A DNA stretch of 51,367 nucleotides from Octopus sinensis. Its lineage: Eukaryota. Location of the stretch: positions 1 to 51,367 of the forward strand of contig NW_021834014.1 of assembly GCF_006345805.1 (NCBI RefSeq), read 5' to 3'. The notes below the pieces were generated by a model. That model saw only the letters and a list, made by a program, of their open reading frames with translations. It was not told where the DNA came from and made no database searches. The position numbers and the translations under genes are program-made. Shown here one piece after another: positions 1,306-49,416 of the stretch. The number at the start of each line of letters is the position of its first letter. The first letter of the stretch is position 1.

Positions 1306-1711
1306 TCTTTATATATAAAAGTCAAGTTGTGTGTCTGTCTCCTACGATTTAGTTTCCTAACTACTCCCACATTTTGCGGTGCAGTTTAACCAAAAGCGGG
1401 TATCTTATAGTCGTGATTCATATCGAGCCCTTCTGGGTATTAGTACGCGTCTACGATGAGTCTACGATTTAAAAAAAAATTTACCATAATTTTTCCGTAT
1501 TTTTAATGCATTTTCGCTCAGTTTATATAAGGGAAGTAACTCTCTAAAAATGTATTATTAAATCTCAGAATGTAAAAAGCTACAGTAACACCCCCCCCCC
1601 CTTTGTGGTTAGCCATATTGTGATGGCTATTATACTTTACATTTATACTCTAAATATGCTCATATAGTTATTCCCCTTACAAACCCGAGCAACGCCAGGC
1701 GATACTGCTAG
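1306..1711 (+). mobile_element. Non-autonomous Helitron, family Y (about 400 bp)
   Basis: A|TCTTTATATATAAAAG start; 3' GC hairpin cccgagcaacgccagg followed by CTAG|T; homologous to 24528-24903, 26920-27314 and the 5' part of 30002-30846. Confidence 0.88.
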
Positions 1712-8835: not shown

Positions 8836-8872
8836 GCGCACACGCGTGTGTGTGTGTGTGTGTATATATATA

Positions 8873-9084
8873 TATCTGTAAAATAATATGTGACAATTAT
8901 TCGGTAGCCAAGATAAAACTCTGAGTTTCGGATGCCGAGGTGGAAATCCACACCACCATCTCTTCGGTTATCTGGCCATCTCCAGATAACCGAAGAGATG
9001 GTGGTGTGGATTTCCACCTCTGCATCCGAAACTCAGAGTTTTATCTTGGCTATTGAATAATTGTCACATATTATTTTACAGATA
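8873..9084. repeat. 212-bp palindrome (103-bp arms, 6-nt loop); inverted PLE-type pseudo-LTR; element continues to about 9150
   Basis: 8873-8975 versus 8982-9084 with 3 mismatches; same family at 45250-45489 and fragments at 24904 and 27315. Confidence 0.93.
8984..9046 (+). ncRNA. Variant hammerhead-like motif (CCGAAGA core); mirror copy at 8911-8973 (-)
   Basis: AGAUAA-CCGAAGA-GAUG...CAUC-C-GAAA-CUCAGAG-UU-UUAUCU; stems I, II and III present; U4C change and an extra C before GAAA. Confidence 0.5.
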
Positions 9085-9174
9085 AATTTCCTCTATTTAC
9101 ATAATATTGAGGTCTCTTTCTTTCTTTTGTTATCTTACCGTTTTTACCAATATATATATATATATACACACACA

Positions 9175-14613: not shown

Positions 14614-16139
14614 CTCTACAGTCACTTGAACTGCTAGAAATAGCAGTCAAATCTTCCTCAAATCACACCCTTTGATCTTAAGTATGTATGTACGAGCTAA
14701 CAGGGGAAACCTCTAAATGGTAGCTAAATATGCTAGAAATAGCAGCCAATCTCCCTGAAATTACAACCTACAGCCTGAATGAAATTCATGGAGTGTTTTT
14801 TTTATTTTTACTTTTTAGAATGTTGGTAATTTAGGAATAGAGAGTAAGAGAGAATGTTCTTAGTGTTTTCATACAGACAAAAAAAGCCATTTCCAGGGTA
14901 ATTCTAGCTCATGAAAATGTTGAAGTTGCTAATAGTTTCAACATCATCTACAAATTATTTTTCAATATATCGTTAGAGGTAAAGATATATATACAGAGGG
15001 TTTGGGCTAACTTTCCTTATTTTTATGTCTCATTTTTTAAAGGAATATTATCATCATCATCATCCTTTCCATGCTGGCATGTGTTGGATGGTTTGAGAGA
15101 AACTGGCTGGACGGAAGACTGCACCAAGCTTCAGTCTCTGTTTTTGCATGGTTTATATGACTAGATGCCCTTCCTAACACCAATCATCCCAGAGAGTGGA
15201 CTGAGAGCTTTCTACATGGCACCAGCATAGGCGAGGTCAGTTCTGGCATGATTTTTACAGCTGGATGCCCTTCCAAATGCCAACCACTTTACAATATATA
15301 CTGGATGCTTTTTACATGGTATCAGCATTGGTATGGGCATCAAGTAACTTGCAAGACAAAGATCTTTTGAGAGGGGAGAGAGCATTGGAGGGGGGTGATC
15401 TTGTGCCAGATTATGAAAGGTTAGAGTGTGAAAGAGAGATAGAAAGAGGTGACTTGCTAAAGAGATACATGGTTACTTGGCCAGAGGTGGGAAGTGATCA
15501 AGAATGAGGACAGAAACAGGTGTGTGGCTGTAGAGGAGATACATGGTTAACCAGTGAGAGGGAGAGAGAAAGAGAGAGAGAGCAGAGGAGAGATGGTGGA
15601 GAAGTGCCAGGGCATACTGAGAAGGAAGTGGAATCAGAATATAGATGGGATGGTAGAAACAGAGCAAGAGAGAGATAGATGGTGGTGAAGTGCTATGGCA
15701 TACCGTCAAGGTATGGGGTTCAGAATATAAATGGTAAGGTATTGCCAAAGGTGCATGAGTAGGAATGTAAGGAGTGTGGGGTGGGGAATGCAGTGACTGT
15801 TGAAAACTGGGTATATAGAGGGAGTGGGAGATGACAGGATTGGGGAGTGAGAGATAAGCATAACATAGGAAATGGGAGGAAGTGAAGAGATGTGGTTTGG
15901 TTTGCTGAGGTAAAGTGTGTGAAAAGTGGTTCTTTTTTTGTTAGCTTGATGTGTTGGTGGACAGTGTTGGTGAGCATAAAGATTAAAGAGGTGAGAAAAG
16001 TTAGTTGAGATGGAGGACTGATGATGATTGATGCTGGGTGTCAAAATGCCAACATCCTGACTCTGTCCAATGCTCTGTGAACACTTCATAGGCTATGAGA
16101 TATGGCATGGACAGCTGCAGCAAAAGCTACAAAGTGAGC

Positions 16140-17813: not shown

Positions 17814-18625
17814 CTTTCACAAATATATATCTGCTAAATCAACAATGTAAAATGGTTACGTGCTTGGAACCCTGATAATCTATTACATCATTTACTCAGC
17901 ATACCTATTTGTTTATTTGTTTAGATCACAAGTGAACCCCATATTCTATATATATATATATATATATACACATACACACACATACATATATATACATACA
18001 TACACACATATATATTTACACACACACACACACACACAATTTTTGTATTTGTTTGCAAGATCCTTGATGTGCAATTGTATGTTGGAAGAAATGTTGAAAT
18101 AATGTCCATATACATGTATGAAGTAGATCACTAAACAGTTGCTAAAACTGACACAATGTATGCCAAAAATCTCTCAAATCACACCCTTTTGTCTTATGTA
18201 TACATATATGTACATTTAAACAACCCAGGGAGATAAAATGACTTGATAGAAAAGGTAGTCAAAGCTCCCTCAAATCAAACCTACTGTCTTATGCATGTCT
18301 ACAATTGCCAAAAAAGGTAGTTGGAACTAATAGAAATAGCAGCCAAATCTCCTTTGACGCAAACACAACTTTCTTAAAAAAGTAAAAGGTATATCAAAAT
18401 GATGAGAAAGTCATTTATAGAGTGCATTTGGTCAAAGGTCTGCTCAATAAAGACTGAACTGTGGCTAAACACCAACAGCTAGTTACAACTGGTCAGATGA
18501 TGAGTCAATGAGAATCCTGTATATGGACTTTTGAAGGGCTAAAGCTAAATCTCCCTCAACTTACATTTTACAATCTTAAAAAAAGCAAGGACACAATAAA
18601 TTACATAAATTCTGTATCTTGTTAA

Positions 18626-21730: not shown

Positions 21731-22759
21731 CTATTCTCCAGATGTTGAGTTTGACAGTGGAGATGACAAAGGATTGAGATGACTGGTGATTTGCTGTGCC
21801 CGAGAAGACCTCTCCATCTCAGCATAAATGAAAGCCCAAAATCAAATCCCTTATGCCTATAGCCTCAGCACCCAATCCGTCCTAAACCTGTCTCTTCCCT
21901 ACAACACATCTAAATACCCACTCTAACATCACTCTTCTGACTAGAGCAAAACAGAACATATTTCATCCTCCACCATTTTGTGCTCCCACTCACCCTCCCC
22001 AACACCATTTACTCTGTTTCTTGCATCCTCAATATCATCTCTTACTTACCATTATATTTTCTGTTAAATGCCCCTTTCACTTCCAGTCTTCTCCTTCACA
22101 CCCTCTCATTCCATCAATGGCAGCCCCCACTACTGATGTTCATCTCCCACTATTTCCACCCCTTTCTACCTCTCACCTTGTCTCTGGCACCTACCATCTC
22201 TCACCTACCACCCACACTCCACATCCATTTATGCTGCTACTTATCCCAATCCTATTTCCTCCATTTTTTCCCCTCCACCACTGACCACACCTCTGCTCCT
22301 CATTCACTGCATTTTCCACTGTCCCCATCTCCATTCATGCTCTTGCAAACCCAATCACCCTGTCTAATCCTCTGGACCACTTTCCTGTTCCCCATTCCTG
22401 TAACTTAAACATACACCTTGACACCTCTTCACAAACTTCTCTCCTTTACTAACAGCAAAACACTTATTTCTCTCTCTCTCTATCATACCTTAACTTCTTA
22501 TTACGGGACAGAAATCCACCTCCCTCAATACTATACCCACCCACCCTCAGTTCAGAGGACTTGTCTTGAGAGTTATTTAGTGACGTCACTTGAACAGGGT
22601 CCATGTGAAAAGCAGCCAGTATGCATAAGGAAAGGCTTCCAGTCACAGAAACCATGCCACAAAGCAGACATCGGAACATAGCACAGTCCTTTGGCTCATC
22701 AACACCTATCAAACTGACCAACCAATGTTATATGATGTTGATGATGATACACACACAAA

Positions 22760-22811
22760 TATATTTACATTTATGTATGTGTGTGTGTGTGTGCATGCGT
22801 GTGTGTGTGTG

Positions 22812-22850
<39 letters not shown>

Positions 22851-23050
22851 ATGCGTGTGTGTGTGTGCATGTGTGTTTCTGTTTGCATTTGTCCCTCATC
22901 ATCACTTGACAACCATTGTTAGTTTATTTAACTTAACAGTTTGGAAAAAAGAGACTGATAAAATGAGTACTACACTTAGAAAAAATAAGTACTGAGTTGA
23001 TTTTCTTGACTAAATTATTCAAAGCAGTGCCCCAGCATGGTCACAATCCA
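22760..23050 (+). mobile_element. SINE 3' half with TG microsatellite
   Basis: gcatttgtccc...cttgacaacc...aaaataagtact...gccccagcatgg. Confidence 0.7.
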
Positions 23051-23065
23051 AAAAAGATGATCTAT

Positions 23066-23220
23066 ATATATGAATAAATACATGGAGTTTAACGCAGGTG
23101 TAAATCAAATATTTTTACTTTCGACACGTTTCGAAAATTCCGCTGTTACTATTTAAAAGAATAAACGGTATAAACAATGCAATCTTCTCTTCAAGGTAAA
23201 AATACACTCATCTATTTTTA
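23066..23220 (-). mobile_element. PLE-type pseudo-LTR fragment with a truncated hammerhead-like fold
   Basis: Minus strand: UUGAAGA-GAAGAUU..AAUUUUC-GAAA-CGUG-UC|GAAAGUAAAAAUA; same family as 49440-49830. Confidence 0.55.
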
Positions 23221-23352
23221 TATATATATATATATACATATATCAATCATGTGTGTATAAATGTAAACAAACAAATATTTGTTTTTTTATTTGAAGCATT
23301 GAAATGTGTATTATATGATACAAATAAGATGATGATATTTTTTTGAACACAA

Positions 23353-23760
23353 GAGTTGCCATTACAACAGAAGAAATACTGGGTGAATTAAGCTTACAAG
23401 GTAGAAAAATTTGTCAACAACCACCCATGGGACCCAAACCCTTATCCCTCAAAGACTCCAGCTGAGTGCTTTATCATTAAGCTAAATTGCCCACTGACAA
23501 ATTCATCTGATTAATTAGACACTAAATACTTTAGCTTTATAGAACAACCATGTGTATAAAAGTAAACAAATATTTCAATACTTCTAGGAAAAAAAAGTTT
23601 GTTTACATTTATTAATCAACAAGCAGTTTAGCTTAGTGGTAAAGCACTCAGTTGGAGTCTTTGAGGGATAAGGGCTCGAGTCCCATGGCTGGTTGTTGAC
23701 AAATTTTTGTGCCTTGTAAGGGGAATTTACCCAGTATTTCTGCTGTTCTAACAGCAACTC
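23353..23760. repeat. Inverted pair of tRNA-like units (138-bp arms, 132-bp spacer)
   Basis: 23353-23490 versus 23623-23760; A box tagcttagtggt and B box gggctcgagtccc in the right arm. Confidence 0.85.
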
Positions 23761-23790
23761 TGCGTTAAAATAAAATAATTTTATTTGTAC

Positions 23791-23824
<34 letters not shown>

Positions 23825-23924
23825 TCACACACATATCTGATATTTACAGAAAGCAAAAGATGAAGACAGGTGTAGGAACAATAAGCAGGTGTATTAGTTT
23901 AATGCTCAGGAAAAATGGGAAAGT

Positions 23925-23960
23925 CTTTTGTGTTTCAAGCATATGCTCTTCATCAGAAAG
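23925..23960 (-). ncRNA. Decayed minimal hammerhead motif
   Basis: CUUU-CUGAUGA-A-GAGC AUAU GCUU-GAAA-C-ACA-AAAG; cleavage triplet mutated (GU to AC). Confidence 0.45.
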
Positions 23961-24109
23961 GATTAAGAGGGAAAAAATGGACAGAGAATGAAAGGGAAAA
24001 AAAGAGATAGAGGCAAGTATGCGGCTAAACAAATATATTAAATATAGTAAATAGATCAAATACAAAATGTCTACATGCAAAAATGAGAGAAAGCAAAAGG
24101 TGGAAGGTT

Positions 24110-24350
24110 TTAGATGATGAATTTCTATTCTTTTACTTGTTTCAGTCATTTGACTGTGGCCATGCTGGAGCACCACCTTTAGTAAAACAAATCAACCCCA
24201 CGACTTATTCTACTAAATCCACTCACAAGGCTTTGGTCAGCCTGAGGCTATAGTAGAAGACATTTGCCCAAGGTACCACATGGAGGGACTGAACCTGGAA
24301 CCATGTGGTTGGGAAGCAAGTTTCTTACCACACAACCACTCCTGTGCCTG
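24110..24350 (-). mobile_element. tRNA-derived SINE, internally deleted
   Basis: ttgtttcagtcatttgactgtggccatgctggagcac 3' end and ggactgaacc...accactcctg head. Confidence 0.85.
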
Positions 24351-25221
24351 TATAAATTTTATTCCATGTGTTTAATTTGCTTATCTGCATAATTGCCTCT
24401 ATACCTGCTCAACTTGATCCCTCTGATAGTCTTTCTTTACCTTGTGGAATGATCCCCTGAAGTCTAAGTTTGAATCTTTTGAGCACTACAGAGAGTCTCT
24501 GGATCTCATCTGTGAACTATATATATACTAGCAGTATCGCCCGGCGTTGCTCGGGTTTGTAAGGGAAATAATTCTATAAGCATTTTTAGAGATGTAAAGT
24601 ATAATAGCCATCTCAATATGGCTAACCACAAAGGGGGAGGGGTGTTACTGTAGGTTTTTACGTTCTGAGATTTAATAATAAATTTTAGAGAGTTACTTCC
24701 CTTATATATGTCAAAAATGGATTAAAAATGGGAAAAATTGATGGTAAATTTTTTTAAAATCGTAGACTCATCGTAGACGCACGCTAATAGCCAGACGGTC
24801 TCGATATGAATCACGACTGCACGACTGCACCGCAAAATGTGGGAGTAGTTAGGAATCTAAATCGTAGGAGACAGACACACAACCTCACTTTTACATATAA
24901 AGATTTCCTCTATTTACATAATATTGAGGTCTCTTTCTTTCTTTTGTTATCTTACTGTTTTTACCAATATACTCTTTACTCTTTTACTCTTTTACTTGTT
25001 TCAGTCATTTGACTGCGGCCATGCTGGAGCACCACCTTTTAGTACTTATTCTATCGGTCTCTTTTTGCCGAGCTGCTAAGTGACGGGGACCTAAACACAC
25101 CAGCATCGGTTGTCAAGCAATGCTAGGGGGACAAACACAGACATATATATATATATAGTTACAGAGATGTACTTGCATAGCAAGTGACTTGATCTGAGAT
25201 CGTGTGCTGGAACGAAAACAG

Positions 25222-25479
25222 TTGCAGCGTTGAAGGTGTTTATAAGCTATTTAAGAAACACACAAAAACCGTTAGATTCACTTCAACATTTAAATTTAAT
25301 TTGTCAAAATATTTTCGTCGCTTTGAGACCGCGACCTGTTAGCACGATATTTTTGTCAGTGAACAGGTCGCGGTCTCAAAGCGACGAAAATATTTTGGCA
25401 AATTAAATTTAATGTTGAAGTGAATGTAACGGTTTTTGTGTGTTTCTTAAATGGCTTAGAAACACCTTCCACGCTGCAA
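25222..25479. repeat. Palindrome (about 118-bp arms, 21-nt loop) inside the composite Helitron; duplicate at 27633-27887
   Basis: 25222-25340 is the reverse complement of 25362-25479 with a few mismatches. Confidence 0.93.
25352..25402 (+). ncRNA. Hammerhead-like motif with swapped 3:8 pair (GUGAACA core); duplicate at 27760-27810
   Basis: UUUGUCA-GUGAACA-G-GUCGC GGUCUCAAA GCGAC-GAAA-AUAU-UU-UGGCAAA; 7-bp stem I, 5-bp stem II, AAUAUU palindromic stem III. Confidence 0.6.
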
Positions 25480-25849
25480 TATATATATACACACATATAT
25501 ATATATGTATGTATGTATGTATGTGTGTATATGTGTATGCATGTATGTGTGTGTGTGTGCGTGTCTGTGCTTGTGATTGTCCTCCACCACTGCTTGACAA
25601 CGAATGTTGGTTTGTTTACATCCCTGTCACCTAGTGGTTTGACAAAGGAAACAGATAGAATAAGTACAATGCTTACAAAAATAAAACTGGAGTTGATTCA
25701 TTAAACTACAATTCTTCAAGGCATTGCCCCAGCATGGCCACAGACCAATGGCTGGAAAAAGTAGAAGAATAAAAGAATACATTCTCTGCTTTGGTCTTAT
25801 GTTCAAGGCATGAGAAAGCTTGAGTTTACATGAGAAGGCCTAACAGACC

Positions 25850-26110
25850 TGGTAGAAACAGCAGCCAAATCTCCCTCAAATCACACCTTACTGTCTTATG
25901 TATGTATATATAATGAGCCAATGAGGGGGACCTCTACATGGTAGCTAGACCTGGTAGAAATAGCAGCCAAATTTCCCCCAAATCACACCTTACTGTCTTA
26001 TCTATGTATATATGTATGTATGAGCCTATGAGGGAGACCCCTACATGGCAGCTAGACATGGTAGAAATAGCAGCCAAATCTCCCTCAAATCACACCTTAC
26101 TGTCTTATCT
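25850..26110. repeat. Three tandem copies (about 100-bp period) of a short dispersed repeat
   Basis: gtagaaatagcagccaaatctccctcaaatcacacc; related copies near 325, 14635, 14735, 18330 and (opposite strand) 44800. Confidence 0.8.
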
Positions 26111-26218
26111 TTCTGCTACTTGGATATAGGTCTTATATTGGTCGTAAAAAACTTTCCTGTCACACACTCACGCACACGCACACACACACACACACGCACC
26201 CTCACACACACACACGCG

Positions 26219-26249
<31 letters not shown>

Positions 26250-26919
26250 ACACGCACATTAGCTTACAATTTTATTTATATATTTGTGTGTCTATGTGTG
26301 GAAAGAGGAAGTGGGAGGCAGAGTGAAAGAATCACTCACTACAGTAAGTGAATTACTTTCATTTTATTCGCTGCCCACTGTGTGTGTGCGTTTGCGTGTG
26401 GTGTAAACCAGACTAAGAAAAGCATTTGACACACACACCAGAATGTGAGTTTTCTGTAAATTTTGCTTAATTGGAGTTTAAATTTAAAAAACTGGACCTG
26501 GCATGACGCGATGCATTCTACTCTTAAAATTGCTAGGTAAATTGTAATTGAAGAAATCCTATATTGTAGATTTGTATAACTCCCAAAGGGAGGCAGATAA
26601 AATCTGCCTTTTATAATAAGAGATTAACTTGAAAATTTTGTGCATTGTAGAAGAATAACCATAATAACTCATAATTTATAAAAAAATTTTATATGGATCT
26701 CCAAGAGTCATGTGGACCCCAGTTGAGATCCACTGAATGAGGCTATCTGCCACACTTGCAAATACTTTGACCGCGCTTCGATGTCACTAACAACTTATAA
26801 ACAAATGTTTTCAATAAAGTATTCTTATAAACACTATCCAATACATTAACACCTGAATCGATAGGAATTCAGAATATAGACTGTGTAACGTTAGTAAATA
26901 AACACTTTTTATAACAACA

Positions 26920-27905
26920 CTAGCAGTATCGCCCGGCGTTGCTCGGGTTTGTAAGGGAAATAATTATATAAGCATTTTTAGAGATGTAAAGTATAATAGC
27001 CATCTCAATATGGCTAACCACAAAGGGGGAGGGGTGTTACTGTAGCTTTTTACGTTCTGAGATTTAATAATAAATTTTAGAGAGTTACTTCCCTTATATA
27101 TGTCAAAAATGGATTAAAAATGGGAAAAATTGATGGTAAATTTTTTTTTAAATCGTAGACTCATCGTAGACGCACGCTAATAGCCAGACGGTCTCGATAT
27201 GAATCACGACTATAAGATACCCGGTTTTGGTTAAACTGCACCGCAAAATGTGGGAGTAGTTAGGAATCTAAATCGTAGGAGACAGACACACAACCTCACT
27301 TTTATATATAAAGATTTCCTCTATTTACATAATATTGAGGTCTCTTTCTTTCTTTTGTTATCTTACTGTTTTTACCAATATACTCTTTACTCTTTTACTC
27401 TTTTACTTGTTTCAGTCATTTGACTGCGGCCATGCTGGAGCACCACCTTTTAGTACTTATTCTATCGGTCTCTTTTTGCCGAGCTGCTAAGTGACGGGGA
27501 CCTAAACACACCAGCATCGGTTGTCAAGCAATGCTAGGGGGACAAACACAGACATATATATATATATAGTTACAGAGATGTACTTGCATAGCAAGTGACT
27601 TGATCTGAGATCGTGTGCTGGAACGAAAACAGTTGCAGCGTTGAAGGTGTTTATAAGCTATTAGAAACACACAAAAACCGTTAGATTCACTTCAACATTT
27701 AAATTTAATTGTCAAAATATTTTCGTCGCTTTGAGACCGCGACCTGTTAGCACGATATTTTTGTCAGTGAACAGGTCGCGGTCTCAAAGCGACGAAAATA
27801 TTTTGGCAAATTAAATTTAAATGTTGAAGTGAATGTAACGGTTTTTTGTGTTTCTTAAATGGCTTAGAAACACCTTCCACGCTGCAATATATATATACAC
27901 ACATA

Positions 27906-27936
<31 letters not shown>

Positions 27937-28620
27937 GTGTATATGTGTATGCATGTATGTGTGTGTGTGTGCGTGTCTGTGCTTGTGATTGTCCTCCACC
28001 ACTGCTTGACAACGAATGTTGGTTTGTTTACATCCCTGTCACCTAGTGGTTTGACAAAGGAAACAGATAGAATAAGTACAATGCTTACAAAAATAAAACT
28101 GGAGTTGATTCATTAAACTACAATTCTTCAAGGCATTGCCCCAGCATGGCCACAGACCAATGGCTGGAAAAAGTAGAAGAATAAAAGAATACATTCTCTG
28201 CTTTGGTCTTATGTTCAAGGCATGAGAAAGCTTGAGTTTACATGAGAAGGCCTAACAGACCTGGTAAAACAGCAGCCAAATCTCCCTCAAATCACACTTA
28301 CTGTCTTATGTATGTATATATATATGAGCCAATGAGGGGGACCTCTACATGGTAGCTAGACCTGGTAGAAATAGCAGCCAAATTTCCCCCAAATCACACC
28401 TTACTGTCTTATCTATGTATATATGTATGTATGAGCCTATGAGGGAGACCCCTACATGGCAGCTAGACATGGTAGAAATAGCAGCCAAATCTCCCTCAAA
28501 TCACACCTAACTGTCTTATCTTTCTGCTACTTGGATATAGGTCTTATATTGGTCGTAAAAAACTTTCCTGTCACACACTCACGCACACGCATACACACAC
28601 ACACACACGCACCCTCACAC

Positions 28621-28658
<38 letters not shown>

Positions 28659-29028
28659 GCACGTTAGCTTACAATTTTATTTATATATTTGCGTGTCTAT
28701 GTGTGGAAAGAGGAAGTGGGAGGCAGAGTGAAAGAATCACTCACTACAGTAAGTGAATTACTTTCATTTTATTCGTTGCCCACTGTGTGTATGCGTTTGC
28801 GTGTGGTGTAAACCAGACTAAGAAAAGCATTTGACACACACACCAGAATGTGAGTTTTCTGTAAATTTTGCTTAATTGGAGTTTAAATTTAAAAAACTGG
28901 ACCTGGCATGACGCGATGCATTCTACTCTTAAAATTGCTAGGTAAATTGTAATTGAAGAAATCCTATATTGTAGATTTGTATAACTCCCAAAGGGAGGCA
29001 GATAAAATCTGCCTTTTATAATAAGAGA
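26920..29028 (-). mobile_element. Composite Helitron copy B (2109 bp)
   Basis: Same termini and cargo as copy A; A|T junctions at both ends; 296-bp unique spacer between the copies. Confidence 0.85.
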
Positions 29029-29039
29029 TATATATATCA

Positions 29040-30001
29040 TCTCTTATTATAAAAGGTAGATTTTATCTGCCTCCCTTTGTCTCTTATAGAAATCTACAAT
29101 ATAGGATTTCTTCAATTACAATTTACCTAGCATTTTTAAGAGTAGAATGCATCGGGTCTTGCCAGGTCCACTTTTTAAAATTTCAACCCCAATTAAGCAA
29201 AATTTAGAGAAAACTCACATTGTGGTGTATAAGTCAAATGCTTTTCTTAGTGTGGGCTACAGCACACGCACACACACAGAGTGCAACGAATAAAGTGAAA
29301 GTAATTCACTTTTTGTAGTGACTGACTCTTTCACTCTGCATTCCCACTTCCTCTTTACACACATAGACACGCAAATATATAAATAAAATTGTAAGCTAAC
29401 GTGTGTGTGTGTGTGTGTGCGTGCGTGTGTGTGTGTGAGGGTGCGCGTGTGTGTGTGTGTGTGCGTGTGCGTGAGTGTGTGACAGGAAAGTGTTTTAGGA
29501 CGAATATAACACCTAAAGTATATCCAAGTAGCAGAAAGATCGCCCGAAAGTGTATATAGATATTTAAATGTATTTATATATTCATCTATACACAGATGTA
29601 TTGTATAATGTGGTGTATATATTCCATAGACGTAACCATTCACTCCGCACAAAGTTTTTAGGACGAAAATAAGATCTAAAGTTATCTCTAAGTAGCACAA
29701 AGATTGCCCAAAAGTGTATATAGATATATAAATGTATTTATATATTCATCTATGCACACATGTATGTATAACATGTGTGTATATATTTCCATAGAGGTAA
29801 CCATTCACTCCATACAAAGTTTTTTAGGACGAAAATAAGATCTAAAGTTATCTCTAAGAAACAGAAAGATCGACCAAAAGTGTATATAGATATTTAAATG
29901 TATTTATATATTCATCTATACACACATGTATGTATAATGTGCATGTATATATTTCCATAGAGGTAACCATTCAATCCATACAAAGTTTTTTAGGACGAAA
30001 A
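29040..30001 (+). mobile_element. Helitron-like family X element (5' TC, subterminal hairpin, TG microsatellite, tandem repeats)
   Basis: A|TCTCTTATTATAAAAGG; AGGTAGAT-TTT-ATCTGCCT hairpin; about 90 percent identical to the X part of copies A and B. Confidence 0.7.
29487..30001. repeat. About 165-bp tandem repeat, 3 units plus a partial unit
   Basis: aaagt(g/t)ttttaggacgaa at 29487, 29651, 29816 and 29982. Confidence 0.92.
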
Positions 30002-30846
30002 TATTCATATATAAAAGAAATGTTGTGTGTCTGTCTACTCCGATTTAGATTCCTAACTACTCCCACATTTTGCGATGCAGTTTAACCAAAACCGGGTATC
30101 TTATAGTCGTGATTCATATCGAGCCCTTCTGGGTATTAGCGCGCGTCTACGATGAGTCTATGATTTTACAAATAATTTACCATCATTTTTTTCCATTTTA
30201 ATGCATATTTTTTAAATAAAGGGAAGTAACTCTCAAACTTCACACCAATATGCGTGCTCATATGCGACGTAATATCACATCAGCAGCATTTCCTCACACC
30301 CTCCTTGCACTTGGCGAAGGCAAAATACCAGGGATGAAAATGGTAATATTGCCATCGATTCCATTTGTACCATTGTTAAGACGCCTTCTGATCTCAGAGA
30401 TGCAGTGTTCCCAGATCTACAAGCTAATTATCAGAATATGGATTGGATTGGCAAAAAGGCTATACTGGCCCCGAGGAATAAAACTGTTCACCATATTAAT
30501 GATGAAATGCTAAAACTCATTCCTGGGGAAGTCTATGTATATCAGTCTATCGATACAACTCCTGACCTAGAGGACGTCATCAACTATCCAATAGAGGTAC
30601 TCAATTCCTTTGAGCACCCCGGACTACCACCACACTTTCTCAAACTTAAAGTTGGTGCCCCTATAATGCTCATCAGAAATTTGGTTCCCCCAAAACAATG
30701 CAATGGCACACGTTTGATCGTTAAGTCCTTATCTCCCACCGTAAACTTATATCAATATTTGCCTGAATAATCATCATAATTCAGTGCAATCATTAACAGT
30801 ACTTTCAAGCAATTCAGCCCCGAGCAACGCCGGGCAATTCTGCTAG
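30002..30846 (+). mobile_element. Helitron deletion derivative retaining a PIF1-like helicase fragment
   Basis: 5' about 220 bp matches family Y; LTxNMRAH..LLALGEGKIP, AILAPRN, NSFEHPGLPPHFLKLKVGAPIMLIRNL..CNGTRL; 3' cccgagcaacgccggg hairpin then CTAG|T. Confidence 0.92.
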
Positions 30847-31905
30847 TATACTATAAAAGTATAGAGGTAACCATTCTATGTTTGTTTTTAATACAATATA
30901 GAATTTCTTCAATTGGAATTTAGCTATGATTTTTCGAAGTAGATTCAATTGGGTCATGGCATATAAATATTTTTCAATTTGACCCCCAATTAAGCAAAAA
31001 TTCGATAAAACTAAATATTTTACGATTTGCCTCTCTCATTTCAACTTTTACTCAAAATATTACCACACTTTCTGCTACTTTCTCTTTGCAAGTGTACACC
31101 ACTATTATATCCTCTTTCTACCACTCTTATTCAACATCACACATTCTGCTACTTTCTCTTATTAATGCTTAAACCACTCCTCAAAAAAAAATATACAGAG
31201 AGGAAACAGAGAAAAAAATAAATACATAACGATTTACTCCTCACACACACACATAGACACGCAAACATATACATATATGACAGTGACAAACACAAATGTT
31301 TCAAACAACTACATACAAACACTCAAACACACACGTGTGTGTTTGTTATTAGTAAAAAAAGGCGCGAAACACAATTCACTTTCTCATTCGAACACATTTG
31401 CAAACACACACCAACAATTCACTGACATATGGTGAAAATTACCCATATTTACTTACCCATGCTTCATTCCCCGCTTGCCTACATAGGGCATCCATTCTCT
31501 TTTAACACAGCATGAAAGCTATTATGGCCAAGACCAAGCTAGAGCATACGTGTTCGTAAGACATATAGCCGCTCACATTATGAGTTACACTATTACACCA
31601 ATTGTACTGGGACTGTTGTCTAGTTCCCGTTAGTTTTTAGTGTCGAGGAAACAAAAGTTTCTCGAGAATGAACAAAAAAAAAACACTCCTACATTTCACA
31701 AAGGTCTTTAAGAAACGATAGGAAGTAAGTTCAGTTGAAGAAAAGAGATGGGTTTAAGCAAATCAGACGGTCGAATTGCCATGATAACTCAACACAAAAG
31801 GTAAGTTGGTTTTTAATTTACTTTCTGTCGCTAAGTTTTGGTAGTATTAATTTGGGAGCGTACTTCAGTTGTCAATTGTTGAAAGAAAGAAATTGTAAGC
31901 TAAGA

Positions 31906-31950
<45 letters not shown>

Positions 31951-32113
31951 TGCGTGCATGTGTGTGTGTGGGTGTGTGTGTAGGAAGTGAAGGATAAAAA
32001 TATGGCAAGAAGTGGACAGATGTACATATATACATACATACATCCATCCATACATACATACATACATGTGTGTGTGTGTATGTATGTATGTGTATTAATG
32101 TGTGTGTGTGTTA

Positions 32114-32504
32114 TCTCTCTCTATATAAAGCTGAAGTTGTCTGTGTGCGGCAGGTTTAGTAGCCTTCAACTAACATTATCTCCTCCGAGACCCTGTGGCG
32201 CAAGTTGACCAAAATTGAGAGTATGATAGAAGAAGGGTTGCTCTTCCTTCTGTAGAAGATAAAATTCAAATCGGATCATGTTAACACCAAAAATTATTTA
32301 CATCAAAAAGGTGCTTTTTTCTATGAAAATCCCTATTTTTTACGATTTTTTCACTGCTGTGTTGCCACTTTTCGGTGTATTTCAACCAGAAAAATGTTCA
32401 CTTGAAGAGATTAACAAGCTACATAATGCAAAATTTTTACTTTTCAAAAATTCCAATTCCAAAGGGTCGAAACAAACCCGAGCAACACCGGGCGATACTG
32501 CTAG
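32114..32504 (+). mobile_element. Non-autonomous Helitron, third family (own 5' end and body, family Y 3' end)
   Basis: A|TCTCTCTCTATATAAAG start; ends aaacccgagcaacaccgggcgatactgCTAG|T. Confidence 0.85.
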
Positions 32505-33285
32505 TTTATATATATACATATGCTTATATGAGTACAGGACGTCACTAATGGTGTAAATAACATGAAATACGTACACAAATGAGTTAAATAATTAAACAAC
32601 GAGACAAAAATGGAAAACAGGACCAGTAAATACAGAGAAAGGGCCCTTCGTCAATTGTCGAGCATTCAATGACAATATGAATCTTTAAAGACAGTTGTTC
32701 CCATAATTTCTGAAATAAAATTTAGGATTTATGGAGGGTCAAATTTGGGAAGAAAAAACCCATGACAGTGGAGACATAGAAGGAAACCGAATGAAAGCAA
32801 ACATGGAGGGTCATTAGAGCAGAATGAGAGGAAAATAGTGAATGCTGGGAGAAACATTTTCTTTTTAAATGAGAAAAGATAGAAGAGAGAGAGAAACACG
32901 TCTGCTCTTTTGAACGCCTGTAGAGGAAAAGAAAGATGGTCACGTGAGGAAAAGAAACACACACAAACAGATATACTTACATACATTATAATATTTTATT
33001 ACAGCTGAGGAGATACACAACTGACACGAAGGCCTATCATGAAACTATCAGCCCTTGCATCATTGCTGTGGCTTCCTAGCTATAATAAAATATAAGCACA
33101 TTAAGTATTGAGTTCTTTTTGTATAAATATTCTGTATGTGTGTACATGTTCATGCAAGTGAATCTATATGTTATTGCATGCATGTGTGTATATGTATGTA
33201 AATATATATAGATCTATAGTTCATCAGTAGAAATACAAGTGAAAACCCAATTTAAAAAAGAGTAAAAAAACAGTGGAGTCCTCAC

Positions 33286-34829: not shown

Positions 34830-37800
34830 GTTTGCTTATGAATTCTGCCAAATGCGAGTTTTCTTTTCAGCTTCATGAAGCTACTGTCACCTGTCCCAGG
34901 GTCTCTAGGGCCCATACCTCCTACACCCTCAGGGTTGGCACTCTCAACATCTACACACTGAAAGGTTGGTCTGGTAAGATTGTTGAAATGCTTAAACAGA
35001 GATGTGTTGATATGTGCTGCATCCAAGAAGTAAGGTGGAGAGGAGGTTCTGCTAGGTTCCTCACAGGCAAAGAACACAGGAACAAGATTTTCTGGGCAGG
35101 GAACACTTACGGGGTTGGGGGTGTGGGTATACTTTTTGCGGAGAAATGGGTAGATAAAGCAACTGAGATAGTCAGAGTATGCGACAGAATACTTAAGATA
35201 AGATTAGTGTTCCATTATGGGTTAGCAACCATTATCTCAGCCTATGCCCCTCAGGCAGGGCTACCCGATGGACAGAAAGGCCGATTCTATGACACCCTCT
35301 TGCAAACTACTGCGTTGACGAATGACAGGAACCTTCCTTTTGTGGGTGGCGACTTCAATGGACATGTTGGACAATATGTCAGGGGCTTCCATGGCATACA
35401 TGGAGGTTACGGTTTTGGCACTGGCAATGAGGAGGGAACCAGGCTGCTGGAGTTCTGCGACACAAATGATCTTATGGTTTGCAATACTAACTTTAGAAAA
35501 CCTGCCAGCCACCTAGTCACCTACCGCGCTGGCAGACACACTAGTCAGATCGACTACATCCTCACCAGAAAAAAGGAAAGATGGCTGCTTATAAATGCCA
35601 AAACCTTCCCAGGCGAAGAATGTACCGCACAGCATAGACTAATAGTTAGTGACTTCAGGATCAGGGCTAAATGGATGCCCAGAAGACGACCAGCAAAGAG
35701 AAGAAGGGTCTGGAGACTTAAAGATCCTGCAAATGGACAGAGATTTAGAGACATATTACTTGAAGCCTTTAATGAAATAGAAGAGGTATAGCTTCACATG
35801 GTATAGAAGACAACTGGAGGTTCCTACAGGACAACCTGCTAAGGGTCACCGACCAGATCTGTGGATGGTGCAAAGTCCCCTCCCGACCCAAAATAACGTC
35901 GTGGTGAAACGATGTTGTTGACAGGGCTATTAGAGAAAAGAGATAGGCTTGGAAGGACTGGAAGAACGGTGGTAGAAGGGAAGTGTATCAGACTGCCAGG
36001 AGGGAAGCTAGGAGGCAGGTTTATTTAGCCAGAGGGGAAGCAGATAAGAAAAAATTTGCCAATGTTCTGCGCCGTGAGGACCAAATCTTTAGGTATTTCA
36101 TGTTGTAAGACAGTGTGTGAGAGAGAATCGTGATGTGGTAAGAGAGAAATGTGTTTGCATGGATGATGGTTCATTTGTGCTGAATGAGGATGCAAAGAGA
36201 GAGGTTTGGAGACACCATTATGAAATGTTGCTGAATAAGGAAAATGAATGGGATAAAAAGAGTCTGCCGAATATCGACCCAACAGAGGGACCAGTTCCTT
36301 AGTAGTTAAGGCAATTAGAATCATGAAGACAGGGAAAGCCCCAGGCCCATCAGGAATTACTGCAGAGATGCTTAAAATATCTGGCAGTGTCGGCTATAGC
36401 CTAGTCACCCATATAGTTAACCAGGTGATACACGAAGGAGTCAGACCCAATGACTGGTGTAGCAGCATACTAGTCAACTGCTACAAACGTAAAGGTGACG
36501 CTTTAGATACAAATAATTACAGAGGTATCAAGCTGTTGGATCAGGTAATGAAGGTTATGGAGAGGGTCATAGCCCAACTGATTAGGAAGAGAGTCAGCTT
36601 GGATGAGATGCAGTTTGGTTTCATGCCAGAGAAAAGCACCACTGATGCCATATTTCTGGTGAGACAGCTGCAGGAGAAATACCTAGCCAAAGATAAACCT
36701 CTGTACCTGGCTTTCGTTGACATGGAGAAAGCCTTTGACAGGGTCCCCTGATCCCTTGTCTGGTGGTCAATGAGGAAACTAGGGATAGATGAATGGTTAG
36801 TGAGAGCTGTGCAAGCCATGTACATGGATGCTGTAAGGTGAGGGTTGGCAATTCAGGGTAGCCATAGGGGTCCATCAGTGAGAGCTGCGCGAGCCATGTA
36901 CAGGGACGCGGTTAGTAAGGTGAGGATTGGCATTGAGTACAGTGAAGAATTCCGAGTAGAGGTAGGAGTCCACCAAGGTTCAATCCTCAGCCGCCTCCTA
37001 TTTATCATAGTCCTCCAGGCAATAAAGGAAGAATTCAAGACAGGATGCACCTGGGAGCTCCTATATGCTGATGACCTTGCTCTAATTGCTGAGTCACTAT
37101 CAGAACTAGAGGCAAAGTTTCAAGTGTGGAGACAAGGATTAGGTGGATGGCCCTGTTCAATCTGTAGTAGAGGCATAGGTAGAAACTCTATAAGATGTAC
37201 CTAGTGTAAGCTATGGACACATAAGAGGTGCAGTAATATCAAAGGAAGGCTAACTGGGAAGAAAGTTTTTGTATGTGACAGATGCTCAGGAGCAATAAAC
37301 ACTGAAAATGTGCAGAAACCGACTTCCGCCACATTCCAGGGAGGAAAACTAGAAATAGTTGATAGCTTCTGTTACCTAGGGGACCAAGTCAGTAGCGGAA
37401 GTGGATGTGCTGAAAGTGTAGCTCCTAGAATAAGAATAGCTTGGGCAAAGTTCAGAGAGCTCCTACCTCGGCTGGTGACAAAGGACCTCTCGCTCAGAGT
37501 AAAAGGTAGACTGTATGACGCATGTGTACGAACAGCCATGCTACATGGCAGTGAAACATGGGCTGTGACTACTGAGGATATGCGTAAGCTCGCAAGGAAT
37601 GAAGCCAGTATGATCCGATGGATGCGTAATGTCAGTGTTCATACTCGACAGAGTGCAAGTACCTTGAGAGAAAAGTTGGACCTAAGAAGTATTAGATGTG
37701 GTGTGGAAGAGAGACGACTGTGCTGGTATGGTCATGTGGCGAGAATGGATGAGGACAGCTGTGTGAAAAAGAGCCACATCCTAGCGGTTGAGGGAACCTG

Positions 37801-45218: not shown

Positions 45219-45249
<31 letters not shown>

Positions 45250-45251
<2 letters not shown>

Positions 45252-45489
45252 TGGTAAAACGGTAAGATAACAAAAGAAAGAAAGAGACCTCAATATTATG
45301 TAAATAGAGGAAATTTATCTATACAATAATATGTTACATTACTCGATAGTCAAGATAAAACTCTGAGTTTCGGATGCCGAAGTGGGAATCCACGACATCT
45401 CTTCGGTTATCTGACTAGTTTTCAAATAGCCAGATAACCGAAGAGATGTCGTGGATTCCCACTTCGGCATCTGAAACTCAGAGTTTTAT
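45250..45489 (-). mobile_element. PLE-type pseudo-LTR with 135-bp fold-back (45355-45489) and variant hammerhead at 45353-45412 (-)
   Basis: Same family as 8873-9150; (TA)n flanks. Confidence 0.8.
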
Positions 45490-47748: not shown

Positions 47749-49416
47749 AAAAAATGATCACCACAACAACCCTCTTCTTTTCAGGCACTGAATTACATCC
47801 CTCCTCCCCAAACCTCACCCCACATTACCTTCCCAGTTTTCAAAGTTGGCACTATCAATGTTGGTACACTGAAAGGTAGGTCTAGTGAGATTGTAGAGAT
47901 GGTTGAAAGGAGACGGGTTAATGTATGCTGCATACAAGAGGTAAGATGGAGAGGTGCTTCAGCTAGGGTCCTTACAGGCAAGGCACATAGGTATAAAGTC
48001 TTCTGGCACAGTAACATGGATGGTGTAGGGGATGTAGGCATTCTCCTTGCGGAGAAATAGGTGGATAATGTCATAGAGGTTGTCAGGGTATGCGATAGAG
48101 TGCTTAAGTTCAAGCTATTCCTACAGAATGGCACATCTACGATTATCTCCGCCTATGCCCCAGATGCGGGGCTGCCAAATGATCAGAAGGACCACTTTTA
48201 TGATACCTTTCTACAGGCTACCTCAAAGACGAGTGGCAAGGACCTCATCTTTGTGGCTGGGGACTTTAATGGGCGTGTTGGGTGGCAATCCGGTATCTTC
48301 ACTGGGGTACACAGGGGCCATAGTATTGGTTCCCAAAACGAGGCAGGAACTAGGCTACTGGAGTTCTGTGATGCATGTAACCTTTTAATCTGTAACACTA
48401 ACTTCAGGAAGCCAGACTGTCACCTTATAACCTATCAGTCAGGGGACTCCGCTAGCCAAATAGACTTCATCCTCACCAGACAGCGGGATGCAGGGTTGCT
48501 CTTAAATACAAAGACCCTCCTGGGTGAAGGCTGTACCCTTCAGCATAGGCTAGTCATTAGTGACTTTAGGCTTGAGGCCAGAAGGATGCCAAGAAGCAGA
48601 CCAATCCAGAAAAGAAGGATTTGGAAGCTAAAGAACCCATCACATGGTCAGAGATTTAGGGACATCCTCATGAAGAAATTTGATGAGAGGGAGGAGGAGC
48701 TACAGACGTTGGACATAGAAGGTAGCTGGAAATTCCTACGGGACAGCTTGCTGAGTGCCACAAACCAAGTCTCTGGATGGTGCAAAGTCCCTTCCAGACC
48801 TAGAGTTACGTGGTAGAGGAATAGTACAGTAGACAAAGCCATTAGAAACAGGCCTGGAAAGCCTGGAGAGATGGGGGTAGCAGGGAACTGTACCAGGTAG
48901 TCAGAAGGGAGGCTGGGCGGCAGGTATACATAGACAAGGGTGAAGCAGAAAAGAAGTTTGCCAATGTCCAGCGATGTGAGGACCAAAGAACTGAGGTATT
49001 TCGTATTGCTAGACAGTGTGTGAGAGAAAATTGTGATGTCAGAGGAGAGAAATGTGTCCGCATGGATGATGGTGCACTTGCTTTCAATGTTTCTGAAAAG
49101 AAAAAGGCTTGGAGAAGCTATTATGAAAGACTGCTGAATGTGGAGAATGAATGGGAGAAGGAGAGCCTGCCAAATGTTGACCCAGTAGAGGGACCAGCTA
49201 TCCTAGTAGATAAAGCAATTAAGGGTATGAAGCCAGGAAAACCCCTGGCCTATCAGGAATCACTGCTGAGATGCTTAAGACATCTGGTGGTGTGGGCTAC
49301 GGCCTAGTCACCCGCATTGTAAACCAGGTAGTTCATAATGGAGTCATACCCAATGACTGGCGTAGCAGCACTATAGTCAACTGCTACAAGGGTAAAGGTG
49401 ATGCTCCAGATAGAAA
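47749..49416 (+). mobile_element. RTE LINE 5' part (APE to start of RT), inverted relative to 45991-47747
   Basis: KVGTINVGTLKGR, ISAYAPD, VAGDFNG, SQIDFIL; ends at CYKGKGDAPDR. Confidence 0.93.

What the first reader, a model, noticed from the sequence alone, without database searches (positions are those of the whole stretch)
24528..29028. A 2.1-kb composite Helitron assembled from two families, moving captured DNA and a ribozyme, present twice
Seen: both duplicated units start exactly at the 5'-TC of family X and stop exactly at the hairpin-CTAG of family Y, each between A and T, with unrelated flanks and a 296-bp unique spacer, which ordinary tandem duplication would not produce. Cargo: PLE fragment, two SINE halves, a ribozyme palindrome, microsatellites. 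The Y element sits against TTTCCTCTATTTAC, the right half of the site AGATAAA|TTTCCTC seen intact at 9080-9095; the left half is missing from both copies. Inference: neither copy is the donor; rolling-circle transposition started at an X 5' end lacking its own terminator, read through about 1.6 kb and ended at a downstream Y terminus, creating a new mobile unit.
Basis: partly seen in the sequence, partly recalled or inferred. Interest (0 to 1): 0.85.

Follow-up and report, generated by a model that had tools for sequence, protein, structure and literature searches.

The report
Chimeric Helitron duplicated in octopus intron
Two near-identical 2.1-kb copies of a patchwork rolling-circle transposon (Helitron) lie 296 bases apart in an octopus intron; this is a clear example of a way of building Helitrons already described in bats and plants, and the ribozyme and Penelope-element claims are not supported.

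Summary
The core observation holds. On the minus strand, 26623→24528 and 29028→26920 are two copies of one unit (1.06% substitutions). Identity falls from 59-60/60 inside to 20/60 outside at both ends. Each unit starts at 5'-TC after A and ends at a hairpin-CTAG before T, with a unique 296-bp spacer between them. The unit has three parts: a 517-bp "X" 5' module, about 1.2 kb of repeat-rich non-Helitron DNA, and a complete 0.4-kb "Y" Helitron that supplies the end.

Y is mobile: a solo copy at 1306-1711 is missing from the matching A|T site in an Octopus sinensis contig. X and Y share their 5' end signal, and a Y relative still carries a Pif1 helicase fragment.

Two more X-plus-Y-type chimeras with different partners lie immediately to the right (29040-30846 and 30847-32504). 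The pairing is therefore recurrent.

- **Not supported:** the ribozyme (Rfam and core-motif searches found nothing) and the PLE fragment (no Pfam hit in six frames).
- **Inaccurate:** the "SINE halves" are two inverted SINE copies.
- **Not established:** "neither copy is the donor". The "half site" is the junction of a MITE-like hairpin with its tail.

The mechanism is the published end-bypass or composite-transposition model. This is a new member of a known kind, of modest interest.

The parts
24528..26623 (-). Unit 1 of the chimeric Helitron (2096 bp): 5' TC at 26623, 3' CTAG at 24531-24528.
26624..26919 (.). Spacer B, 296 bp. Unique in the window and absent from the fetched octopus loci.
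   Evidence: L001, L002; L003, L004
26920..29028 (-). Unit 2 of the chimeric Helitron (2109 bp): 5' TC at 29028, 3' CTAG at 26923-26920.
24528..24903 (-). Complete Y-type Helitron inside unit 1 (its own 5' TC at 24903; 18-bp deletion). It supplies the terminator.
26920..27314 (-). Complete Y-type Helitron inside unit 2.
24904..24971 (.). 68-nt 'Z tail' (also at 27315-27382). It is 98.5% identical to 9087-9154.
24972..25157 (+). SINE copy with an internal deletion (also at 27383-27568).
25222..25479 (.). Near-perfect 258-nt hairpin (also at 27633-27887). No ribozyme match.
25544..25781 (-). Complete SINE copy in inverted orientation (also at 27956-28193), preceded by a TATG/TG microsatellite at 25479-25575.
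25845..26110 (.). 2.5 copies of a 107-nt repeat (also at 28257-28521). The repeat family is dispersed, with copies at 14614-14771 and 18162-18352.
26107..26623 (-). X-type 5' module of unit 1 (also at 28518-29028), including (CA)n. It is truncated 55 nt into the 166-nt monomer that continues in X3.
29029..29036 (.). TATATATA, host remnant between the head-to-head 5' ends. 29037-29039 (TCA) is probably the first 3 nt of X4.
29040..30846 (+). Second chimera, X3..Y3. It has an X core at 29040-29540 (86-88% to the units), a 166-nt repeat x3.1 at 29487-30003, and Y3 at 30002-30846. Y3 carries a Pif1 helicase fragment at 30238-30735 and ends ...GGGCAATTCTGCTAG|T.
30847..32504 (+). Third chimera, X4..W. 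It has X-like sequence at 30892-31012 (77%), (GT)n at 31908-31981, and a Y-like 391-bp element W at 32114-32504 that ends ...GATACTGCTAG|T.
1306..1711 (+). Solo Y Helitron (A|TC...CTAG|T). It is absent from the orthologous A|T site in the O. sinensis contig L004.
8870..9163 (.). Z1: a 218-bp TA-flanked hairpin (MITE-like) plus a 76-nt tail. The second copy, Z2, is at 45238-45489.

Best explanation
The two units are copies of one chimeric, non-autonomous Helitron.

Structure (shown): each unit has three parts.
- A 517-bp X-type left end.
- About 1.2 kb of ordinary repeat-rich octopus DNA: a 107-nt repeat, two inverted SINEs around a 258-nt hairpin, microsatellites and a 68-nt Z tail.
- A complete 0.4-kb Y-type Helitron.

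Mechanism (inferred from the Helraiser work):
1. A RepHel transposase supplied in trans nicks at the X 5'-TC.
2. It unwinds the strand 5'->3' and stops at the first terminator it recognises, the hairpin-CTAG of Y.
3. The released strand is circularised and pasted between an A and a T without a target duplication.

How the chimera arose (inferred): a 3'-truncated X lay about 1.2 kb upstream of a Y in the same orientation, so everything between them became cargo. This is the end-bypass or composite-transposition model.

Further points (shown): at least one of the two copies is a transposed daughter, and which one is open. X and Y carry the same kind of 5' signal, and the nearly identical 33-nt 3' end closes Y, W and Y3. 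They are therefore probably moved by one transposase lineage. The same kind of pairing happened at least twice more in this 8-kb nest.
For: - The duplication boundaries fall exactly at TC and CTAG. Identity is 59-60/60 inside and 20/60 outside.
- A|T flanks and no target duplication are seen at all ends in the window and in an O. vulgaris Y copy.
- Y behaves as an independent element. There is a solo copy and an empty orthologous A|T site in O. sinensis.
- The 3' motif occurs 5 times against 0 expected. In all five copies it is followed by T.
- The X and Y 5' ends are alike.
- Y3 holds a Pif1_2B helicase fragment (E=2e-15). Its best matches are multi-copy octopus helicases.
- X homology to X3 stops 55 nt into X's own 166-nt monomer and is followed by unrelated DNA.
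- X3..Y3 and X4..W repeat the pattern with other junctions.
- Published precedent exists. It covers the composite HelibatN539 and the end-bypass model (PMC4224331). It also covers the hairpin as terminator, 11.7% read-through and the left end being essential (PMC4778049).
Against: - Only two copies are known, and they are neighbours. No genome of this species could be searched, so no third copy, donor locus or empty site for the units was seen.
- The O. sinensis contig lacks the whole 11 kb (22254-33205), and the O. vulgaris locus is not colinear there.
- Helraiser shows no local hopping. Two random insertions 296 bp apart would be roughly a 1e-7 event, so some local mechanism is still unexplained.
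- The 3' hairpin is short: 6 bp with a bulge, -4.5 kcal/mol, z=-1.0.
- No Rep (HUH) domain was seen in the window.
- The assembly cannot be checked with reads.
Confidence: 0.7

Rival explanations
1. Nested insertion plus early termination. The donor X was intact. Y, the SINEs and Z had inserted inside it. Transposition from the X 5' end simply stopped at the first terminator, the nested Y, and the rest of X was lost. X did not lack a terminator of its own.
For: In the neighbouring chimera, Y3 sits inside X3's own 166-nt repeat, at monomer position 20. Nesting of Y in X therefore does occur. Helraiser stops at a recognised hairpin.
Against: In the units, nothing between the X core and Y resembles X-native sequence. 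X homology ends 55 nt into the monomer, and the next 1.2 kb are a dispersed 107-nt repeat, SINEs, a hairpin and a Z tail. No X-type element with its own distinct 3' end exists in the window.
Confidence: 0.25
2. The whole 4.5-kb block (unit 2, spacer, unit 1) was inserted in one event. This could be read-through of the first Y terminator, or a rolling-circle multimer of an 'A+B' element that ended at the second Y.
For: The block is bounded by (TA)5 on the left and (TA)4 on the right. These would join into one microsatellite at an A|T. Intact Helraiser reads through its end in about 12% of events, and tandem Helitron arrays are reported. Helraiser shows no local hopping.
Against: It only moves the origin of A-B-A to another locus. 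Unit 2's terminator is intact: its last 44 nt are identical to unit 1's. The spacer ends in ...CAAGTTAA, not in a CTRR-like end, so an 'A+B' element has no visible terminator. (TA)n is the usual Helitron target anyway.
Confidence: 0.12
3. X...Y is the old, standard architecture of one family, and the internal DNA accumulated later by insertions. On this view the unit is not a recent chimera and nothing was captured by read-through.
For: All three X-type modules in the window end in a Y-type element. Divergence is similar in both modules: X against X3 is 86-88%, and Y of unit 2 against Y3 is 88.8%.
Against: The sequence just upstream of the Y-type 5' TC differs in the three cases: Z tail, 166-nt monomer and (GT)n. 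Each Y-type part is a complete element preceded by A. The partners also differ: Y, Y3 with a helicase fragment, and the distant W.
Confidence: 0.15
4. The duplication is not transposition. It is a segmental duplication, or an assembly artefact that places two haplotypes in series.
For: The 1% difference between the units is in the range of allelic divergence (from my own knowledge of octopus heterozygosity, not tested here). Many of the differences are 1-nt indels at homopolymers, as in long-read errors.
Against: Both boundaries coincide to the base with Helitron termini. With 5 such 3' ends in 51 kb, the chance is about 1e-4 per boundary. The flanks and spacer are unique, so neither A-B-A-B nor B-A-B-A is present. 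There are no N runs in the region read.
Confidence: 0.06

Closest known systems
HelibatN539, a compound Helitron of vespertilionid bats (Thomas et al. 2014, PMC4224331)
   Same: [quoted passage not shown] The intervening host DNA is captured and amplified as a new element. It is explained by end bypass (Feschotte & Wessler 2001; Tempel et al. 2007, as cited there).
   Different: For HelibatN539 the parental locus with both progenitor ends was found and the cargo was a gene fragment (KCNQ5). Here no parental locus is available, the cargo is only repeats, the 3' partner is a complete short Helitron with its own 5' end, and only two adjacent copies are known.
Helraiser read-through and 3' transduction (Grabundzija et al. 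2016, PMC4778049)
   Same: The left end is required, the 3' hairpin acts as terminator, and bypass leads to termination at a downstream site. Insertion is at AT dinucleotides. Natural cases exist where one Helitron abuts another.
   Different: That work is experimental, in human cells, and found no local hopping. Here the two copies are 296 bp apart, inside a nest of 4-5 related insertions.
Tandem Helitron arrays and head-to-tail junctions in plants and bats (summarised in Grabundzija et al. 2018, PMC5876387)
   Same: Copies lie in the same orientation side by side. At 30846/30847 a CTAG end abuts the next element directly.
   Different: The flagged pair is separated by a unique 296-bp spacer. 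It is not joined CTAG-to-TC.
Annotated Helitrons of Octopus vulgaris (PMC13282606)
   Same: Helitrons make up about 1% of that genome in 84 families, with 8 families and 178 copies called recently active. This agrees with a young pair (about 1% divergence) and a lineage-specific Y insertion here.
   Different: That paper gives counts only. Its held supplement has no sequences matching these termini, so family identity could not be checked.

Membership tests
Canonical Helitron (Helitron1 type) | 5' terminus TC | tested here: met
   Homology among X copies starts at TCTCTT, and homology among Y copies at TCTTTAT.
Canonical Helitron (Helitron1 type) | 3' terminus CTRR | tested here: met
   CTAG is present at all five 3' ends in the window and in O. 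vulgaris and O. sinensis copies.
Canonical Helitron (Helitron1 type) | GC-rich hairpin about 10-15 nt before the 3' end | tested here: inconclusive
   CCCG-A-GC/AAC/GC-CGGG lies 12 nt from the end and is conserved. It is short: -4.5 kcal/mol, z=-1.0 against shuffles.
Canonical Helitron (Helitron1 type) | Insertion between host A and T with no target-site duplication | tested here: met
   All ends are flanked A|...|T and no repeated flank is present. An empty A|T site for the solo Y exists in O. sinensis L004.
Canonical Helitron (Helitron1 type) | No terminal inverted repeats | tested here: met
   The ends TCTCTTATTATAAAAGG and ...GATACTGCTAG are not complementary. No inverted pair links the unit ends among the 25 longest of 277 pairs listed.
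Canonical Helitron (Helitron1 type) | Autonomous relatives encoding Rep (HUH) plus a Pif1-type helicase between the same termini | tested here: inconclusive
   Y3 carries a Pif1_2B helicase fragment between Y-type ends. An O. sinensis helicase fragment is followed 1.35 kb downstream by a related end...GGGCAACGCCGGGCTATACTGCTTG|T. No Rep domain or full-length element was seen.
Chimeric (composite) Helitron formed by end bypass | 5' and 3' ends derive from different elements that also exist apart | tested here: met
   Y exists solo. The X core exists with other 3' partners in X3 and X4.
Chimeric (composite) Helitron formed by end bypass | Non-Helitron DNA lies between the two ends and is copied with them | tested here: met
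   About 1.2 kb of SINEs, hairpin, microsatellites, 107-nt repeat and Z tail is shared by both units.
Chimeric (composite) Helitron formed by end bypass | A parental locus with the two progenitor ends flanking the captured DNA | not testable with these tools
   No genome of this species is searchable. Metagenome scans gave 0 hits.
Self-cleaving ribozyme (hammerhead and others in Rfam) | Match to a covariance model, or the conserved catalytic core | tested here: not met
   There is no match at gathering score, no ribozyme at E<=10, and no CUGANGA...GAAA inside the units.
Penelope-like element fragment | RT or GIY-YIG coding remnant | tested here: not met
   The six frames of unit 2 give no Pfam family at E<=0.1. 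A non-coding PLE piece cannot be excluded without a repeat library.
Helentron / Helitron2 | Insertion between T and T, with short terminal inverted repeats | tested here: not met
   The flanks are A and T, and the ends are not inverted repeats.

The most novel reading that the evidence does not exclude
The 8-kb nest records a local or end-directed mode of Helitron insertion that the Helraiser cell assays did not show. The nest contains two direct copies 296 bp apart, a head-to-head pair 8-11 bp apart, and one chimera inserted 3 nt inside the 5' end of another. On this reading, X modules that have only a left end persist by repeatedly borrowing the terminator of short Y-type Helitrons. Daughters land next to resident Helitron ends.
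Probability: 0.2. Interest if true: 0.5.

Novelty: new member of a known kind. Interest (0 to 1): 0.3.

Why it matters
This is a clean, base-resolved natural example of how Helitrons swap ends and pick up neighbouring DNA, in a cephalopod, where such detail has not been described. The pair is young (about 1% divergence) and a Y copy is missing from a sister species, so the family was active recently. The locus could be used to study Helitron mobility and target choice in octopus. It does not change what is known about the mechanism.

Tried and rejected
- **Rfam:** a scan at gathering score and a permissive scan gave only sub-threshold miRNA-like hits. These are caused by microsatellites and by the head-to-head X ends.
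- **Hammerhead core:** the regex search found none inside the units.
- **Further copies through spurious ORFs:** a junction-spanning 68-aa ORF had no homologue in the protein collection. A 98-aa ORF over the X 5' end was not on record.
- **Exact-pattern scans of metagenome contigs:** the Z-tail/Y junction and the 3' terminus each gave 0 hits.
- **Orthologous loci:**
  - The O. vulgaris locus L003 is colinear only up to window 21675; beyond that it holds unrelated repeats.
  - The O. sinensis contig L004 jumps from window 22253 to about 33206 with a 124-bp tRNA-SINE piece in between. It gives no empty site for the units.
- **Helicase loci L001 and L002:** neither holds a full RepHel. The long ORFs upstream in L002 are low-complexity repeats.
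- **Tandem duplication:** rejected because neither A-B-A-B nor B-A-B-A is present.
- **O. vulgaris repeat paper:** its held supplement has no sequences to compare.
Full report
**Source and setting**

The window is octopus DNA. Four exon-sized stretches on the minus strand encode alpha-mannosidase 2: 19164-18937, 14188-14003, 856-740 and 266-198. The best protein matches are O. vulgaris and O. sinensis. Large parts of the window align at 95-99% to O. vulgaris OX597837.1 (L003) and to O. sinensis contig VCDQ01005736.1 (L004). One exon differs by the same two residues from both species. The window therefore comes from a close third taxon or a divergent haplotype. The finding lies upstream of these four exons (the gene is on the minus strand), most likely in an intron: in the O. 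sinensis contig a gene model carrying a weak Glyco_hydro_38N match spans the orthologous stretch.

**The observation**

Two direct copies are present: unit 1 at 24528-26623 and unit 2 at 26920-29028. A global alignment gives 22 substitutions in 2084 aligned positions (1.06%) and 12 small indels. Ten of the substitutions lie in a CA microsatellite.

The boundaries are sharp.
- The 60 nt inside each end match 59/60 and 60/60.
- The 60 nt outside match 20/60 on each side.

On the minus strand, each unit starts A|TCTCTTATTATAAAAGG and ends ...AAACCCGAGCAACGCCGGGCGATACTGCTAG|T. The 296-bp spacer has no other match in the window or in the fetched loci. A tandem duplication of unit plus spacer would leave A-B-A-B or B-A-B-A, and neither is present.

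**Y is a real Helitron**

- A solo copy at 1306-1711 (85% identical to the copy in unit 1) has the same TC and CTAG ends between A and T.
- At the orthologous place, the O. sinensis contig reads ...CTAGACTAGATA|TATATA... without the element. This is an empty A|T site.
- An O. vulgaris copy (L003 3036-3421) has the same ends and flanks.
- The 25-nt 3' motif occurs five times in the window against none expected, always followed by T. It occurs six more times in 112 kb of other octopus DNA.
- The predicted 3' hairpin is conserved but short: 6 bp with a bulge, -4.5 kcal/mol, z=-1.0.
- Y3 (30002-30846) keeps the first 240 nt of Y and a related 3' end. Between them lies a frameshifted Pif1 helicase fragment (Pfam Pif1_2B, E=2e-15). 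Its best relatives are multi-copy octopus helicases.

**What X is**

The X core (517 bp, including a CA run) has a third copy, X3, at 29040-29540 on the plus strand. X3 is 86-88% identical, and the homology again begins exactly at TC after an A. The first 16-17 nt of X and Y differ only by two 1-nt indels. The two are therefore sub-lineages with the same end signals, not unrelated families.

X3 continues into a 166-nt repeat (3.1 copies). The first 55 nt of that repeat are also the last 55 nt of the X core in the units. After that point the units carry unrelated DNA. X in the units is therefore 3'-truncated relative to X3.

**Cargo between X and Y**

The cargo contains:
- 2.5 copies of a 107-nt repeat, which is also dispersed at 14.6 and 18.2 kb;
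- a complete SINE in minus orientation;
- a TATG/TG microsatellite;
- a near-perfect 258-nt hairpin;
- a second SINE in plus orientation with an internal deletion;
- a 68-nt Z tail.

Rfam finds no ribozyme at gathering score or at E<=10. No hammerhead core lies in the units. No frame of unit 2 has a Pfam match. The ribozyme and PLE labels are unsupported.

**The half-site argument**

The Z tail is preceded by ...ACAGATAAA in both other copies. That left part is the end of a 218-bp hairpin with perfect terminal inverted repeats (TCTGTAAAATAATATG...) flanked by TA on both sides. In other words, it looks like a MITE. In Z1 the hairpin is preceded by (TA)n, and unit 1's Y is preceded by (TA)5. A tail copy without the hairpin would give exactly unit 1's arrangement after a Y insertion. 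The claim that neither copy is the donor is therefore possible but not shown.

**The neighbourhood changes the picture**

Three further features lie immediately right of unit 2.

1. Unit 2 and X3 are head to head.
2. X3, its repeat and Y3 form a second chimera (29040-30846) that starts at TC and ends at CTAG. Joining its flanks gives TCA|TATACTATAAAAG, a canonical X/Y-type 5' end. This chimera therefore probably inserted 3 nt inside the 5' end of the next element.
3. The next element (30847-32504) is X-like at 77% and ends in W (32114-32504), a distant Y relative with the same 33-nt 3' end.

All three X-type modules in the window thus end in a complete Y-type element, each with a different junction: Z tail, 166-nt monomer and (GT)n. 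No X core was found in the other 43 kb of the window or in 112 kb of other octopus DNA.

**Mechanism**

The structure matches the published end-bypass or composite-transposition model.
- Grabundzija et al. show that the left end is required, the hairpin is the terminator and read-through occurs in 11.7% of events. They also report natural Helitrons abutting each other.

Initiation at X and termination at Y are inferred, not shown.

**What remains unexplained**

The proximity of the copies has no explanation yet. Helraiser does not hop locally, and two random hits 296 bp apart are roughly a 1e-7 event. Options are reinsertion near the parent, targeting of resident Helitron ends, or a single A-B-A insertion. 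The block is bounded by (TA)5 and (TA)4.

A minor oddity concerns where the units differ. Substitutions between them cluster in the X and Y modules (8 in 809 bp) and not in the cargo (1 in 1080 bp; Fisher p=0.006). Possible causes are gene conversion across the centre, conversion from other family members, or polishing errors in high-copy sequence.

**Limits**

No genome of this species could be searched. The O. sinensis contig lacks window 22254-33205 altogether, and the O. vulgaris locus is not colinear there. No empty site, donor or third copy of the 2.1-kb unit was obtained.

**Verdict**

This is a real, well-delimited chimeric Helitron present twice, inside a Helitron nest. The mechanism is known, several cargo claims are wrong, and the interest is modest.

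Noticed in passing
window 1306-1711 vs L004 about 26870: The solo Y Helitron is present in the window but absent from the orthologous A|T site in the O. sinensis contig. This is a lineage-specific insertion, or less likely a precise loss.
   Followed up: yes
window 22254-33205 vs L004 3667-3790: The O. sinensis contig lacks 11 kb, including the whole Helitron nest and about 3 kb of flanks. It has a 124-bp tRNA-derived SINE piece instead. Whether this is a deletion, an insertion complex or a contig misjoin is not resolved.
   Followed up: partly
window 29040-30846 and 30847-32504: Two more X-type plus Y-type chimeric Helitrons lie here. The first probably inserted 3 nt inside the 5' end of the second: joining its flanks restores TCA|TATACTATAAAAG.
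   Followed up: yes
window 30238-30735: A frameshifted Pif1-type helicase fragment (Pfam Pif1_2B) lies inside the short Helitron Y3. It is 87.7% identical at DNA level to an O. bimaculoides copy (L001).
   Followed up: yes
window 8870-9163 and 45238-45489: The Z repeat is a 218-bp perfect-TIR hairpin flanked by TA (MITE-like), followed by a 76-nt tail and bounded by (TA)n.
   Followed up: partly
window 24972-25781 (and 27383-28193): An imperfect palindrome of about 800 bp centred near 25350: SINE, microsatellite, 129-nt arm | arm, microsatellite, SINE. The inner arms are 90% complementary and the SINE arms about 78%.
   Followed up: partly
window 24528-26623 vs 26920-29028: Substitutions between the two units cluster in the X and Y modules (8 in 809 bp) and are nearly absent from the cargo (1 in 1080 bp; p=0.006). 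Unit 1 carries most of the derived states.
   Followed up: partly
window 26592-26608, 28997-29013, 29055-29071: The X 5' module has a strong 8-bp hairpin (GGCAGATTTTATCTGCC) 15 nt from the 5' end (z=-3.0). This is not a usual feature of Helitron left ends.
   Followed up: no
window 28991-29077: Sub-threshold Rfam hits (mir-556 at 64 bits against a gathering score of 84) are produced by the head-to-head X 5' ends. This is not a miRNA gene.
   Followed up: yes
window 19164-18937, 14188-14003, 856-740, 266-198 (minus strand): Exons of an alpha-mannosidase 2 gene. One exon differs by two residues from both O. vulgaris and O. sinensis.
   Followed up: partly
window 3388-3945, 34832-35791, 48061-48816: ORFs with reverse-transcriptase and endonuclease domains (LINE-type remnants). 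They belong to repeats found several times in the window.
   Followed up: no
window 23336-23490 / 23623-23777: A 155-nt inverted repeat (84% complementary) lies left of the nest. It was not characterised.
   Followed up: no
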